A stretch of 64,000 nucleotides of DNA from Fimbriosthenelais zetlandica (GCA_977030845.1 OZ365115.1:4092001-4156000), one strand, 5' to 3'. Shown: positions 30,167-39,872, counted from the stretch's first letter. Notes: a model not told the origin generated them from the letters alone. Numbers and translations are program-made.

Positions 30167-33100
30167 ATGGTTGTCATCAAGAAAATCCATGCTCGTCAGA
30201 TCTTTGACAGCCGTGGTAATCCCACGGTCGAGGTCGATCTCACCACTGAAAAGGGTAGGTAAAATTTTACCAAAACATAATTAAATACATATTTTTATTC
30301 ATTAATTGCCAAATATAATTTTAAATCATTTCCACAATAAAAATTGTTGGCCTAGGCTTACTTTGGAATCAAGCACGAAAATGTGTCCAACTTATTGGAT
30401 TATCCCCTGATACTATGCTATTATATTTAACTTTTTAAGACATTTTGATTTGATTTTCTAGGTCTTTTCCGGGCCGCTGTACCCAGTGGTGCATCCACCG
30501 GTATTTATGAAGCCCTAGAGATGAGGGACGGTGGTAAAACTTACCACGGCAAAGGTGTGTCTAATGCTGTAGGCAACATCAACAACACCATCGCCCCAGC
30601 CCTTGTAGGAAAGGTGAGTAATTATTTCTCCTACTTTTTTTTTTCATAAAATATAGAAAAAATTAGAACAAGTATAGTACCGGTACTATTCCTGAATTTC
30701 CATTAAATAATCTGTTATTTCTTTATTCTGCCAGGAAATTGACATCACTGACCAGTCTGCTGTTGACAAAATTATGCTGGACTTGGATGGAACTGAGAAC
30801 AAATGTAAGAGAAAATTTACATTTATTTGATAATTTTTATTATAATAACTATATATGCTCTATGTCTCGCAAAATGCAAGTGAAATATTTTACATGCATT
30901 GCATATGTCCACTAATATAAGGCCTAATACTATATAATTTGATGATTTTTGTTGAATGTAAATATGTCATTGTCATCATAACACATCGATTCAAATGTCA
31001 TTTGTAATATCAGTCTTGGATATTATGTATCTTTTACTATTTCTTACAGCTAAACTTGGTGCCAACGCTATTCTCGGTGTGTCCTTGGCTGTCTGTAAGG
31101 CTGGGGCCGCCCACAAAGGCGTCCCACTCTACCGCCATATCGCTGACCTGGCTGGTAACAAAGATGTCATCATGCCAGTCCCAGCATTCAACGTTATCAA
31201 CGGTGGCAGCCATGCTGGTAACAAACTGGCCATGCAGGAGTTCATGATCCTCCCCACTGGTATGTTCAGCTAAATGTGAAAACTTAATTTCGTTTTGTAT
31301 ACTAATATCCAATATTGACTGAATAGAAATTGCAAGATCTCTTATATTGATGTGAAATTCAGATAGATATGTTAACAATATAATTATTAAGGTTAACTTT
31401 TATTTCAAACCATTATATTTCAGGTGCTGCTAACTTCAGTGAGGCTATGCGTATGGGTACTGAGATCTACCATCACCTGAAAAAGGTTATTAAGGAGAAG
31501 TATGGACAGGACGCCTGCAATGTAGGGGATGAGGGAGGCTTCGCTCCCAACATTCTTGACAATTTTGAAGGTAAGAATAAATAATATCAAGAGTCCTAAA
31601 CTAGTACAGAAATTCAGAGTAATTTCATTTTTCTGAATTAAAAATATCAATTAAATATTTCGTTTTTTTCAAGGGCTCGAGCTGTTGAAGGTTGCCATTG
31701 AAAAGGCTGGCTACACTGGCAAGATCGAGATTGGTATGGATGTCGCTGCATCTGAGTTCTGTAAGGAAGGATTTAAATACGATCTTGACTTCAAGAACCC
31801 CAACTCTGACCCCACTAAATGGGTAAGTAGTGATACTTTTCTGTCACTTTTTGCTTTGTAACTGGTCCTATTGTGCGACAGTGGAGTTGGTGCTCACTCT
31901 TGACAGCTAGTTAGTTAAAGTTAGAGTGAGTTACAATTTTGCCTTTACCTGTGATAAGATATAAGAATGAGTGGTCTTGACATTCGAAATTATGTTGGAG
32001 TGGAAGAGAGCACTTGGGAATGATAAGATACTGATAGTGTATACATCTACTTCTTAGCCCAACAATAAGGCGGAAATCATCCAGTTCCAGTTAAATACAA
32101 GCTAGTGTTGTGGTATAAATTTCTTTGACCACTTTTGTCCTACTAATGACGCACTTCTTTAATTTCTCTAATAAATTATTTAAAGAAGTTGCTAAGTAGC
32201 CGTGGTACCTAATGTGGCATGACTACCTTGTTACTAAGGAGCTATGAAACGCCCAGGTACCTAAGGATGGTTGCCATGGTAACAGTAGCTATGGTTACCT
32301 GTGTCCTGGCATCCTCCTCCAGGGGTGCCAGGTGATGGAGTGAGTAGTCTGGGATGGGGGGTGGCGGGGGGGTCTTGCTCCTATGCTATAAATAAGTCTA
32401 TACAGACCTTGGAACAGACAGACAGTGGTAGATTTAAGATTTAAACTTTCACATTATTTATGATGATTATCCATGGCTAAATTATAAACATGCAACTTAG
32501 CATAATTAGTCTAATATTCAGTTGAGCCGCCGGCCCATCCCCCCTTCGTTATGTACATGTACATACCATGTGTACCGTTCACCTTGTAGAATGGAAGGGC
32601 AAATGATAGACTGTCTGGCTCTCTCAGAACCCACTTGTTCAGTCTGACAAGTAGGACTGAAGCAATTTTCAAAATATTCTCGTGTCCTCTATTTGGCAAA
32701 TAATCTTATAAATCAAACGATATTATTAAAGATGCATTTAGATTTTGATTCAAATTAATTTAATTTAATATATTTATTCGTTAAAACTTTAATTTCTTGG
32801 AAAAATTGGACTGGGTGCTGGCTGGTAGGCAGAGATTTGTTGCTCTTAAATAAAAAAGACAGCCCTTACCGTTTGAAATATGAAGCCAGGGGAACTATTC
32901 ATCGCTCCCCTTTGGACTCAGTTGGTCAGTGAAGAGTCAAGGGGAGAGATTAATAGCTCTTCTGATACACATTTTACGGGAGCTTAGAGGAGTCAGAGCG
33001 ATCGCTCCCCTCAAACGGCAAGCGCTGAAAAGTATGATATATAAAGGTAGGCCAGGACTAGGCAGGTGACATTGACCTGACAGGTGAAGGTGAGAGGGAG

Positions 33101-34423
33101 ACTCGTACACTAGTTCTAGGTCCCTCTACCTGATGAGTAGGAGTAACCAGAGTAGGCCGTGTAGTGTGAGTGAAGTACTCACTGCACGAGATTACTCAGA
33201 ACATTACTTAGTTCCCAAGTGCCTTCCTCTTCCCACTGACTGCACTGTTCCTGATTTAGAATAGAATTCATGGGTACATAAAAGATGAGGAATATCATCT
33301 AGGTTTAACTCTTAACAAAATGTCCTAATTATTTTTAGAATTTATATCATGATTTGCGGTTTTAAAAGAAAGATATGTGCTAAAATGAGCTGGTATGTCC
33401 CAGATATTTTTTTATAAAAACCGTAAATAATATTTTTTTTATAAAAACCAGTATGATATAGTTCTCGGTGCTGCATTTTCGGTCATACAATTTTGTTTTA
33501 AATATATCAAATCTTTATTAACTCACATTGCAGCTGTCATCTGACGAATTGTTTGGTGTCTACAAAGAGTTCTGTGAGAAGTACCCGGTGGTATCTATTG
33601 AGGATGCCTTTGACCAGGATGACTGGGATGCATGGACCAAAATGAATGGCAAAATCAATATTCAACTCGTTGGGTAATTATCTTTTCCTGAAAGAGATTT
33701 GCTCAATTTAATATTATGACCTAGAAACAAAGATTAATGACTTTCCCACATACAATTATAATATAGGTGGAAAAACTTGAAGATGCCATTTTTAAAATTT
33801 AAATCGATTATAGTTTATGCATTAGTGACTTTGATTCATGGCTTGTTTCAGTGATGATTTGTTGGTGACAAACCCCAAGCGTGTCCAGACCGGTATTGAC
33901 AAGAAGGCTTGTAACTGCCTCCTGCTCAAAGTGAACCAGATCGGCTCAGTGACTGAGAGCATCAAGGCGTGCAAGATGTCCCAGGACGCTGGCTGGGGTG
34001 TCATGGTCTCCCACAGATCTGGAGAAACTGAGGACTGCTTCATTGCTGACCTCGTGGTCGGTCTCTGCACTGGACAGGTGAGAAGTTCACACCACCTTGT
34101 TTGAAACTGACTCTTAAAGATATTTTCTTTTGTTGCCACAAGTAGTATTTGAATATAATTAAAACAAGTGATTGTGGAAACAACTACTGTTCCTTGACAA
34201 GCATTGGGATTTGAATGTCTAATTTTGTTCCATAAACCAATCATGTTTGCATATATATGATTACTTATGCAATTCCCTTTGCTTTGACCAGATCAAGACT
34301 GGTGCTCCATGCCGTAGCGAGCGCTTGGCCAAGTACAACCAACTGCTCCGCATTGAGGAGGAACTGGGAGCCAATGCTAAATTCGCTGGCAAGGACTTCA
34401 GAAACCCCAAAGCAGGCAAGTAG
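30167..34423 (+). CDS. ENO: Enolase unit 1 (437 aa, 9 coding exons)
   Basis: Exons 30167-30254, 30462-30613, 30735-30804, 31050-31259, 31424-31570, 31674-31822, 33534-33673, 33852-34077, 34292-34423; all GT-AG, total 1314 nt. Motifs [84 protein letters not shown]. Confidence 0.97.
32860..33027. mobile_element. 168-bp MITE with 17-bp terminal inverted repeats, in enolase unit 1 intron
   Basis: CAGCCCTTACCGTTTGA at the left end versus TCAAACGGCAAGCGCTG at the right (15/17 match). Internal ATCGCTCCCCT repeated. No clear TSD. Confidence 0.65.
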
Positions 34424-39600: not shown

Positions 39601-39872
39601 TTAAATGTTTTTTAAATCTTCATGTGCTATATAATTATCATTATAATGTTCGCAATCTTCTGTTATTTTGATCATAAATTACATTTCACTCAGAGCAACC
39701 TTCACCAATATATATTCGTACATCTTGCACACAATTATATTTTCAGATTAAAACCGGTGCTCCTTGTCGCAGTGAACGTTTGGCGAAGTACAATCAGCTA
39801 CTGCGAATTGAAGAAGAACTAGGCGCTCGTGCCAGGTATGCTGGCAAGAACTTTAGAAGCCCAAATCTTTAA
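36684..39872 (+). CDS. ENO: Enolase unit 2 (10 coding exons, no own start codon; phase-1 entry)
   Basis: Exons 36684-36773, 37066-37217, 37470-37539, 37665-37732, 37857-37998, 38170-38316, 38496-38644, 38794-38933, 39203-39428, 39747-39872; all GT-AG and in frame. All enolase catalytic motifs intact. The first exon begins (n)[21 protein letters not shown] after a strong acceptor TTTCTCTTTCAG. Confidence 0.93.
38975..39142. repeat. 75-76 bp tandem repeat (2.2 copies) with internal hairpin, intronic
   Basis: Units start GTAAAATATCCAC at 38975, 39050 and 39126. Each full unit carries a CCACTACCT/AGGTAGTGG stem. Confidence 0.85.

What the first reader, a model, noticed from the sequence alone, without database searches (positions are those of the whole stretch)
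30167..39872. Predicted single-chain double enolase made through a GC-AG donor hidden just before the first stop codon
Seen in sequence: enolase unit 2 is complete and intact, but its first exon (36684) starts mid-codon (phase 1) and has no ATG. The last exon of unit 1 ends ...AAA GCA G|GC AAG TAG, which contains CAG|GCAAGT (intron start 34416) in phase 1. Established: CAG|GCAAGT is the optimal GC-AG donor consensus, and enolase works as a dimer. Inference: splicing 34415 to 36684 gives ...[20 protein letters not shown]..., an open 2616-nt frame (871 aa) with two full enolase domains. Ignoring the weak GC donor gives ordinary 437-aa enolase. One locus would thus switch between a normal subunit and a covalent heterodimer, analogous to two- and three-domain phosphagen kinases. 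I know of no such enolase, but cannot search.
Basis: partly seen in the sequence, partly recalled or inferred. Interest (0 to 1): 0.95.

Follow-up and report, generated by a model that had tools for sequence, protein, structure and literature searches.

The report
Two enolase genes spliced into one
Two neighbouring copies of the glycolytic enzyme enolase appear to be joined by an unusual splice just before the first copy's stop codon, giving one 871-residue chain with two complete enzymes; the same layout is kept in related species and a relative's RNA shows the joined form.

Summary
Two intact + strand enolase genes lie in tandem. Unit 1 runs 30167-34423 and encodes 437 aa. Unit 2 runs 36684-39872.

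Unit 2's first coding exon begins in phase 1 and has no in-frame ATG. Unit 1 ends AAA GCA G|GC AAG TAG, that is CAG|GCAAGT in phase 1. Joining 34415 to 36684 gives an open 2616-nt frame of 871 aa.

No sequencing run of this species was served, so the junction is not shown here directly. The comparative evidence is strong:
- Four related lineages carry the same pair on one contig (the window, L002/L004, L016 and L017).
- In each, unit 1 ends [C/G]AG|GCAAGTA[A/G] in phase 1.
- In each, unit 2 starts at a phase-1 acceptor with no ATG of its own in the exon as spliced. L002/L004 have an in-frame ATG 4 codons upstream of the acceptor.
- A protein assembled from Tara Oceans metatranscriptomes (P0273), from a relative of L017, reads ...FRNPKG|VSTIEY.... 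That is the junction this splice predicts.
- Full-length double-enolase cDNAs also exist in other marine organisms. P0274 (869 aa) was assembled in 13 RNA-seq contigs.

I found no paper describing such a protein. Most likely the locus makes both a normal enolase and a covalent double enolase, and unit 2 has no start of its own. I put this at about 0.78.

The parts
29200..29282 (+). Probable non-coding first exon of unit 1, with donor GAG|GTAGGT at 29283 (inferred)
   Evidence: Unit 1's ATG exon begins at an acceptor (ttccag|GTAAAATAG...) about 21 nt before the ATG. The best upstream donor scores 5.85. No RNA evidence.
30167..34423 (+). Enolase unit 1: nine coding exons, 437 aa, complete with its own ATG and a TAG stop
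   Evidence: Gene model built. Pfam Enolase_N and Enolase_C matches on its exons.
34413..34423 (+). GC donor CAG|GCAAGT (intron starts at 34416, phase 1), overlapping the last two codons and the TAG stop of unit 1
   Evidence: It scores 8.64 on the non-GT positions, as high as the best real donors of the locus. It is conserved in L002, L003/L017 and L006/L016.
34416..36683 (+). 2268-nt stretch that would be an intron in the fused mRNA. In the monomer mRNA it would be the 3'UTR plus spacer.
   Evidence: Polyadenylation signals lie at 35365 (ATTAAA) and 35629 (AATAAA). It shows no similarity to unit 1's upstream region and no block conserved with L002.
36655..36683 (+). Pyrimidine-rich tract and AG acceptor (…catttctctttcag|CT CTG AGC)
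   Evidence: The homologous phase-1 acceptors are L008 tgcag|GC GGC AGT, L002 acag|TG AGC, L016 ttacag|GA AGT and L017 ctttttcag|TG AGC.
36684..39872 (+). Enolase unit 2: ten exons, 436 codons starting in phase 1, no start codon, TAA stop. All catalytic motifs are intact.
   Evidence: A CTG (36686-36688) lies where unit 1 has its ATG. dN/dS against unit 1 is 0.14.
37733..37856 (+). Intron specific to unit 2, splitting what is one exon in unit 1 (after ...CKAGAAQK)
   Evidence: In L002/L004 unit B and in L017 unit 2 the matching exon also ends at ...QK, which suggests a shared intron. This marks these second units as orthologues of unit 2.
40215..40220 (+). First AATAAA after unit 2's stop; a candidate polyadenylation signal of the fused mRNA
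   Evidence: A consensus match only.

Best explanation
The two tandem enolase genes work as one transcription unit with two outputs.

First output: the primary transcript is cleaved and polyadenylated about 1 kb after unit 1's stop. Translation then ends at TAG 34421-34423 and gives an ordinary 437-aa enolase.

Second output: transcription runs on and the spliceosome uses the GC donor at 34416 with the acceptor at 36683|36684. The stop codon, the 3'UTR and the spacer are removed as a 2268-nt GC-AG intron. Unit 2 is read in frame behind unit 1, giving an 871-aa chain with two complete enolase domains joined by a connector of about ten residues (...[15 protein letters not shown]...).

Unit 2 has lost its own start codon and is expressed only in this way.

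Enolase is a dimer whose interface uses the N-terminal strands of one subunit and the last helix of the other. The fused chain therefore most likely folds as an intramolecular pseudo-heterodimer.

Shown: the sequence anatomy, its conservation in four lineages, and a fused RNA-derived protein in a relative.

Inferred: use of the splice in this species, coexistence of both products, and the fold of the fused chain.
For: 1. The frame is open across the join, and unit 2 has no in-frame ATG.
2. Unit 2 is under purifying selection (dN/dS 0.14) with all catalytic motifs intact, so it must be translated.
3. Relatives with both genes on one contig repeat the design:
   - L002/L004: ...CTG GCA G|GC AAG TAA, then 1.8 kb, then acag|TG AGC.
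   - L016: ...GCA GCA G|GC AAG TAG, then 1.5 kb, then ttacag|GA AGT, with an in-frame TAA 3 codons upstream.
   - L017: ...GGA G|GC AAG TAA, then 10.5 kb, then ctttttcag|TG AGC, with an in-frame stop 14 codons upstream.

4. L008 shows the same phase-1 acceptor.
5. The acceptor sits 2 or 5 nt before the conserved Ser codon in different lineages, so the phase was kept through a shift of 3 nt.
6. The donor's third-codon positions are identical in four lineages, while the rest of the exon is near saturation at such sites.
7. P0273, assembled from Tara eukaryotic metatranscriptomes (MERC, Plass; 10.1101/386110), reads ...AGENFRNPKG|[17 protein letters not shown]....
   - It has unit-1-like residues before the join and unit-2-specific residues after it (AAQK, AGKK, GNRLA, IQNNFE, SEPGHW).
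   - It is 90% identical to L017's unit 1 last exon and 91% identical to L017's unit 2 second exon.
8. None of three spacers holds a strong or conserved ATG-bearing phase-1 exon.
9. Double-enolase cDNAs exist elsewhere. P0274 is on 13 Logan contigs, with library adapter at the 5' end. P0272 and P0275 are further examples.
10. The enolase dimer interface uses strands beta1-beta3 and the last helix alpha12 (PMC4667285).
Against: - There is no RNA of this species. Both run searches listed none, and the four metatranscriptomes laid on the locus held only distant enolases.
- P0273 is a greedy protein-level assembly. Its first 135 residues are a fish-like chimera, so it is not a clean single-organism transcript. 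However, a head-to-tail join cannot arise from overlap of homologous segments.
- L002/L004 have an in-frame ATG four codons upstream of the acceptor. It could serve as an independent start if that stretch is exonic there.
- Weak donors do occur among the real introns of this locus (scores down to -0.25). A poorly scoring private first exon therefore cannot be excluded.
- The AlphaFold2 model of P0274 gave pTM 0.62, which says nothing firm about how the two halves pack.
Confidence: 0.78

Rival explanations
1. Unit 2 is an independent gene with its own promoter. It has a small first exon in the 2.3-kb spacer that supplies an ATG and ends in phase 1. The GC-donor look-alike at unit 1's end is then a by-product of the conserved Gly-Lys-stop codons.
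For: - This is the usual structure for such a gene, and unit 1 itself has an upstream exon.
- Phase-1 ATG candidates exist, for example ATG 36116 with the donor at 36132, and ATG 34695 with the donor at 34756.
- Lys-stop is a common enolase C-terminus, so part of the motif is explained by coding.
- L002/L004 have an in-frame ATG just upstream of the acceptor.
Against: - The candidates have poor donors. The exception lies 270 nt after unit 1's stop.
- The candidates share no peptide or position between the window, L002 and L016.
- No spacer block is conserved between the window and L002.
- This rival does not explain the identical third-codon positions of the donor in four lineages.
- It does not explain P0273's junction.
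- It could coexist with the fused form as an alternative first exon.
Confidence: 0.12
2. Unit 2 is translated from a non-AUG start. The CTG at 36686-36688 lies exactly where unit 1 has its ATG. The mRNA would have an upstream exon that is non-coding.
For: - CTG in the window aligns with the ancestral ATG.
- In L002 and L017 the same codon position reads xTG, which becomes GTG with the intron's last G or with the donor's G.
- CUG and GUG are the most efficient near-cognate starts (general knowledge).
Against: - At the same position L008 has GGC and L016 has xGA, which are not start-like.
- In L002, L016 and L017 the codon is split by the acceptor.
- Phase was kept through a 3-nt shift of the acceptor, which argues that the upstream exon is coding.
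Confidence: 0.04
3. Unit 2 is a transcribed but untranslated or decaying duplicate, and any read-through splice is noise.
For: It lacks a start codon. Read-through chimeras between neighbouring genes are common at low level (general knowledge).
Against: - The frame is intact over ten exons.
- dN/dS is 0.14 and all catalytic motifs are present.
- Orthologous second units are intact in L004, L016 and L017.
- The duplication is old: synonymous sites are saturated in several exons.
Confidence: 0.03
4. The pair is an operon-like unit. Unit 2's acceptor would receive a trans-spliced leader that donates AUG plus one base.
For: The acceptor has no visible cis partner carrying an ATG. Some animal spliced leaders end in AUG (general knowledge).
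Against: - The enolase tree places the window next to molluscs, a group in which I know of no leader trans-splicing.
- Rfam found no spliced-leader RNA in the window.
- P0273 shows unit 1 sequence, not a leader, upstream of the junction.
Confidence: 0.02

Closest known systems
Ordinary eukaryotic enolase (phosphopyruvate hydratase; Pfam Enolase_N PF03952 plus Enolase_C PF00113), a homodimer of chains of about 435 aa
   Same: Each unit is a full-length enolase with both domains and the usual motifs: [64 protein letters not shown] and [11 protein letters not shown]. Unit 1 alone encodes a normal 437-aa subunit. Among named proteins seen here the closest is Crassostrea virginica enolase, at 81% identity.
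   Different: Here a second complete unit without a start codon follows in frame after a GC-AG splice. Both subunits of the dimer would then lie in one chain.
Unnamed double-enolase transcripts in public sequence collections: P0273 (MERC), P0274 (Logan, 13 cDNA contigs), P0272 and P0275 (JGI metatranscriptomes)
   Same: Each has two complete enolase units head to tail. Eight to eleven residues lie between the conserved Pro of ...FR.P and the residue aligned with the His of ...HAR. P0273 belongs to the window's clade and has the junction predicted by the GC donor.
   Different: P0272, P0274 and P0275 fall outside the window's clade, and their halves group within each protein. Their gene structure is unknown. 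None has a name or, as far as I could find, a paper.
Two- and three-domain (contiguous) phosphagen kinases of molluscs and cnidarians (from general knowledge; not examined here)
   Same: They arose by tandem duplication of a whole enzyme and expression of the copies as one polypeptide.
   Different: As far as I know, those are single genes with a continuous frame. Here the upstream copy keeps its own stop and can still make the single-domain protein. The link depends on a donor that overlaps the last codons.
Conjoined or read-through genes, where the upstream gene's last exon is spliced from an internal donor to the downstream gene's second exon
   Same: The mechanism is the same: the stop codon and polyadenylation site are skipped by splicing to the next gene's first internal acceptor.
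   Different: Such chimeras are typically rare, poorly conserved and join unrelated genes (general knowledge). This one joins paralogues, is conserved in at least four lineages, and the downstream partner has no start of its own.
Fused glycolytic enzymes of protists (PGK-enolase P0061, GPI-enolase P0058, TPI-enolase and others among the hits)
   Same: Enolase is expressed as part of a longer chain together with another glycolytic enzyme.
   Different: Those are fusions with different enzymes, found in dinoflagellate-like transcripts. They are not enolase with enolase, and no splice switch is known for them.

Membership tests
Enolase (phosphopyruvate hydratase) | Enolase_N and Enolase_C domains above Pfam's cut-offs | tested here: met
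   Exons of both units match PF03952 (60-62 bits, cut-off 35) and PF00113 (130 bits, cut-off 21.5).
Enolase (phosphopyruvate hydratase) | Catalytic and metal-binding motifs present in both units | tested here: met
   The motif stretches are identical, or differ only by K to R in GNKLA/GNRLA, between the units and the usual enolase sequence. This rests on reading the alignment, not on a residue-by-residue structural check.
Enolase (phosphopyruvate hydratase) | Converts 2-phosphoglycerate to phosphoenolpyruvate | not testable with these tools
   Needs an enzyme assay of the 437-aa and 871-aa products.
U2-type GC-AG intron | GC at the first two intron bases, with a near-perfect match at the other donor positions | tested here: met
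   The donor is CAG|GCAAGT at 34413-34421. It scores 8.64 on the seven other positions, against 2.2 to 8.2 (one at -0.25) for the 17 GT donors of the locus. The position weights came from memory and are approximate.
U2-type GC-AG intron | AG acceptor preceded by a pyrimidine tract, with an open frame across the join | tested here: met
   The acceptor reads catttctctttcag|C at 36683|36684. The joined frame is 2616 nt without a stop.
U2-type GC-AG intron | The spliced form is seen in RNA | tested here: inconclusive
   No run of this species was listed. Metatranscriptome contigs laid on the locus were from distant organisms. JGI scans found neither the junction nor unit 2's exon 1. A relative's RNA-derived protein, P0273, has the predicted junction.
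Single-chain tandem-domain enzyme (contiguous dimer) | Two complete catalytic units in one open reading frame on one mRNA | tested here: inconclusive
   Predicted for the window. Shown for P0274 on 13 cDNA contigs and for P0272. Pfam finds two stretches each of Enolase_N and Enolase_C in P0273 and P0274.
Single-chain tandem-domain enzyme (contiguous dimer) | The two units pack like the native dimer | tested here: inconclusive
   The AlphaFold2 model of P0274 from a 10-row alignment gave pLDDT 80 and pTM 0.62, with no coordinates returned. A crystal structure paper names strands beta1-beta3 and helix alpha12 as dimer contacts (PMC4667285). That makes a short link plausible.
Conjoined (read-through) gene pair | Same strand, adjacent, with the upstream stop and polyadenylation site removed by splicing into the downstream gene's first internal acceptor | tested here: met
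   This rests on sequence anatomy. The pair differs from typical cases in being conserved and in the downstream gene lacking a start.

The most novel reading that the evidence does not exclude
In a mollusc-like clade, the second enolase gene has given up its own promoter and start codon and survives only as the C-terminal half of a covalent enolase pseudo-heterodimer. A GC donor laid over the last two codons of the first gene competes with polyadenylation and so sets the ratio of free subunit to fused dimer. The same end state, a single-chain double enolase, arose separately in other marine organisms. It would be an unrecognised, recurrent form of a central glycolytic enzyme.
Probability: 0.5. 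Interest if true: 0.85.

Novelty: new variant of a known kind. Interest (0 to 1): 0.75.

Why it matters
Enolase is among the best-studied enzymes, and in eukaryotes it is treated as a dimer of separate chains. A conserved single-chain double enolase would be a new molecular form of it.

- The two active sites sit in fixed, non-identical partners, so the two halves could specialise.
- It would be a clear case of a downstream paralogue that has lost its own start and depends on splicing from its neighbour.
- It would show a GC-AG donor overlapping a stop codon acting as the decision point between two protein products.
- For genome annotation it is a warning. Pipelines that ignore GC donors will call unit 2 a truncated or start-less gene. 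None of the annotated proteins returned by the searches here was such a fusion from this clade.
- The related transcripts found in other marine organisms suggest the phenomenon is wider than one lineage, and it is directly testable.

Tried and rejected
1. RNA evidence for this species. Both run searches listed no holder. I used the single read-laying run on four marine metatranscriptomes found by related protein. Only conserved exons were covered, at 80-90% likeness, by other organisms, and no informative joint was listed.
2. The search of 50%-identity representatives with exon 8 showed no protein with two strong stretches. I first read this as absence of double enolases. One search proved that reading wrong, because such proteins are evidently not separate representatives there.
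3. I aligned the exon translations to a full-length enolase to build a full-length query (A3). MAFFT scattered the pieces and I abandoned it.
4. I did not type the full-length protein into any tool. The window's own fused sequence was therefore never searched or folded as such.
5. Looking for a private first exon of unit 2:
   - No similarity between unit 1's upstream region and the spacer.
   - No conserved block between the window's spacer and L002's.
   - No strong or shared ATG exon in phase 1 in three spacers.
   - The L002/L004 comparison only shows that the first 1.1 kb after the stop is more alike than the rest.
6. The ESM Atlas held no double-enolase cluster of 50 or more members.
7. 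The structure prediction of P0274 was inconclusive on how the domains pack.
8. Exact-match scans of JGI contigs for the predicted junction and for unit 2's exon 1 both found nothing. The species is simply not there.
9. Two literature searches with twelve phrasings found no paper on a double or fused enolase-enolase protein.
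Full report
**What is in the window**

- Two enolase genes lie head to tail on the + strand.
- Unit 1 (30167-34423) has nine coding exons, its own ATG and a TAG stop, and encodes 437 aa.
- Its ATG exon begins at an acceptor about 21 nt upstream of the ATG. 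A non-coding first exon therefore probably lies further up, near 29200-29282.
- Unit 2 (36684-39872) has ten exons. Its first exon begins, after catttctctttcag, with CT CTG AGC TAC..., that is in phase 1.
- That frame is closed by a stop just upstream and contains no ATG.
- Unit 1 ends AAA GCA G|GC AAG TAG, so CAG|GCAAGT sits in phase 1 with its first intron base at 34416.
- Joining 34415 to 36684 gives 2616 nt and 871 codons without a stop.
- Pfam places Enolase_N and Enolase_C on exons of both units.
- There is no third unit in the window.

**Unit 2 is a working gene without a start**

- The two proteins are 393/438 identical, and every catalytic motif is present in both.
- Across the coding sequence dN/dS is 0.14.
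- Synonymous divergence is patchy: zero in some 30-codon stretches and saturated in others.
- This fits an old duplication with later gene conversion, as another first-stage note on this stretch proposed (s1-223658).
- A gene under such constraint must be translated. It therefore needs an upstream coding exon that ends in phase 1.

**No RNA of this species could be reached**

- Both run searches listed no holder.
- The one read-laying run, on four marine metatranscriptomes found through a related protein, showed only other organisms' enolases on the conserved exons. Nothing mapped in the spacer.
- Exact scans of JGI contigs for the predicted junction, and for unit 2's exon 1 alone, both found nothing. 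The negative junction scan therefore says nothing.

**Relatives' genomes**

Searching with single exons returned prokaryote-style gene calls on eukaryotic contigs in ENA metagenome assemblies. Fetching those contigs gave genomic loci of several related species. Four lineages carry both genes on one contig:

| Lineage | Unit 1 ends | Gap | Unit 2 begins | Notes |
|---|---|---|---|---|
| Window | ...GCA G\|GC AAG TAG | 2.3 kb | cag\|CT CTG AGC | |
| L002/L004 (same sample, about 95% alike) | ...CTG GCA G\|GC AAG TAA | 1.8 kb | acag\|TG AGC GAA | |
| L016 (the L006 contig extended) | ...GCA GCA G\|GC AAG TAG | 1.5 kb | ttacag\|GA AGT AGG | in-frame TAA three codons upstream |
| L017 (the L003 contig extended) | ...AAA GGA G\|GC AAG TAA | 10.5 kb | ctttttcag\|TG AGC CGT | in-frame stop fourteen codons upstream |

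- A short Tara Oceans contig, L008, shows the acceptor alone: tgcag|GC GGC AGT.
- In the second unit of L002/L004 and L017, the exon corresponding to unit 2's fourth also ends at ...QK. This suggests a shared intron and marks these second units as orthologues of unit 2.

Three points follow:

1. The ATG-less, phase-1 first coding exon is a stable feature of unit 2, not an accident of one genome.
2. The acceptor lies 2 nt before the conserved Ser codon in some lineages and 5 nt before it in others. It has moved by one codon while keeping phase. That is expected only if the exon spliced to it is coding.
3. The donor motif is conserved beyond what the protein requires.
   - In the last exon of unit 1, only 7 of 33 codons that encode the same residue in all four lineages are codon-identical.
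   - Yet GGC, AAG and the preceding third-position A are identical in all four.
   - A rough, post hoc chance is about 0.01.
   - Part of the motif, Lys-stop, is a common enolase ending.

**A private first exon was looked for and not found**

- The spacer has no similarity to unit 1's upstream region.
- It has no block conserved with L002's spacer.
- Listing every ATG-to-GT exon in phase 1 in the spacers of the window, L002 and L016 gives only weak donors. The peptides are unrelated between species.
- This does not exclude such an exon, since one real donor of the locus scores -0.25.
- L002/L004 do have an in-frame ATG four codons upstream of the acceptor.
- The idea of a CUG start is attractive in the window, because CTG sits exactly where unit 1 has ATG. 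It fails in L008 (GGC) and in L016 (xGA).

**Fused transcripts exist**

- I searched the 5.8-billion-protein collection with the enolase part of a long fusion protein, so that only proteins of 465-1479 aa were candidates. This returned proteins that scored above the query's own self-match.
- They are double enolases.
- The most relevant is P0273 (900 aa, source MERC).
  - MERC is the Plass protein-level assembly of 775 Tara Oceans eukaryotic metatranscriptomes (10.1101/386110).
  - Its first 135 residues are a fish-like chimera, a known risk of that method.
  - The rest reads as a unit-1-like enolase, then ...AGENFRNPKG|[17 protein letters not shown]..., then a unit-2-like enolase.
  - The second half carries the residues that set unit 2 apart from unit 1 in the window: AAQK, AGKK, GNRLA, IQNNFE and SEPGHW.
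  - The join is what L017 predicts: ...NPKG, then G|TG read as Val, then Ser.
  - P0273 is 90% identical to L017's unit 1 last exon and 91% identical to L017's unit 2 second exon.
  - A head-to-tail join cannot be produced by overlap between homologous segments. At least one RNA read must have crossed it.
- In a tree, the window's units, the relatives' units and P0273's first half form one clade next to oyster and sea-slug enolases (identities). The window probably comes from a mollusc or a near relative. This is an inference from one protein.

**Double enolases elsewhere**

- P0274 (869 aa) is encoded exactly on 13 Logan contigs of about 2.8-2.9 kb from several runs. It has short untranslated ends and, in two contigs, library adapter at the 5' end, so these are cDNAs.
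- P0272 and P0275 come from JGI metatranscriptome contigs of about 2.9 kb.
- They fall outside the window's clade, and their halves group within each protein. This means either separate origins or homogenisation.
- In all of them, 8 to 11 residues separate the conserved Pro near the first unit's end from the position of the His in ...HAR of the second.
- Protist versions with a longer linker, and annotated 877-928-aa models in a fungus and an oomycete, also appeared. The oomycete model has two identical halves. I think it may be an annotation merge, though I did not test that.
- Two literature searches found no description of such proteins.

**How it most likely works**

- The anatomy fits a choice between two fates of one primary transcript.
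- If cleavage and polyadenylation happen first, translation stops two codons after the donor and gives the ordinary subunit. Signals lie at 35365 and 35629.
- The stop immediately behind the donor is kept as TAA or TAG in all four lineages. This suggests that the ordinary product matters.
- If transcription continues, the GC donor pairs with the acceptor at 36684 and the fused chain results.
- GC donors need a near-perfect match at the other positions and are often alternative (general knowledge). This one has the perfect match.
- The enolase dimer interface uses strands beta1-beta3 of one subunit and the last helix of the other (PMC4667285). I therefore expect the short connector to allow an intramolecular pseudo-dimer.
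- That expectation is untested. The AlphaFold2 model of P0274 from a shallow alignment had pLDDT 80 but pTM only 0.62.

**Verdict**

- It is a new variant of known kinds: enolase, tandem-domain enzymes and conjoined genes.
- It is apparently undescribed in the literature I could search, although unnamed examples already sit in sequence collections.

Noticed in passing
window 30167-39872: Synonymous divergence between the two units is patchy. It is zero in codons 31-60, 181-210 and 361-390, and saturated in codons 91-120 and 391-420. This fits an old duplication with exon-scale gene conversion, as note s1-223658 proposed.
   Followed up: partly
P0419, P0420 (Crassostrea virginica LOC111132341, 1234 and 1226 aa): NCBI models of an oyster enolase run on past ...FAGEKFRYPY into unrelated downstream sequence with a PF07810 domain, in two variants. 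A splice out of the enolase's last codons into a following gene may therefore also occur in oysters, with a different partner.
   Followed up: no
P0061, P0058, P0068 and many hits: There are hundreds of dinoflagellate-like transcripts in which enolase is fused behind phosphoglycerate kinase, glucose-6-phosphate isomerase, triosephosphate isomerase, phosphoglycerate mutase or guanylate kinase.
   Followed up: no
P0278, P0279, P0282 (813-981 aa, JGI): These are protist-type double enolases. Their two units are joined by a linker of about 60-70 residues that looks like a small calcium-binding-type module (for example ...FSRYDGKKTGVYEKSELVAIMDAL...).
   Followed up: no
P0389 (607 aa, MERC): This protein reads end of unit, junction, a full unit, the same junction, then the start of a unit. 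It is either an assembly cycle between two near-identical units or a sign of more than two units in a chain in that organism.
   Followed up: no
P0273 residues 1-135: The N-terminal part of this MERC protein is fish-like (close to P0013), and the rest is from the window's clade. It is a protein-level assembly chimera across a conserved stretch.
   Followed up: partly
L002 10897-11950 versus L004: The first 1.1 kb or so after unit A's stop is 98-100% alike between the two contigs of one sample, while the next 0.8 kb is 62-95% alike. This could mark a long functional 3'UTR of the monomer mRNA, or it could be chance.
   Followed up: partly
window 56488-60523: Rfam finds two U4 snRNA genes (59199-59340 and 59981-60122, - strand) interleaved with tRNA genes. 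Another first-stage note reports the same array.
   Followed up: no
window 46558-46696: A run of 139 N. It was left as it is.
   Followed up: no
L002 1-6036, L004 3931-5421 and 14278-15459: Reverse-transcriptase and gag-protease genes of retroelements lie beside and inside the enolase loci of the relatives, including in unit B's long introns.
   Followed up: no
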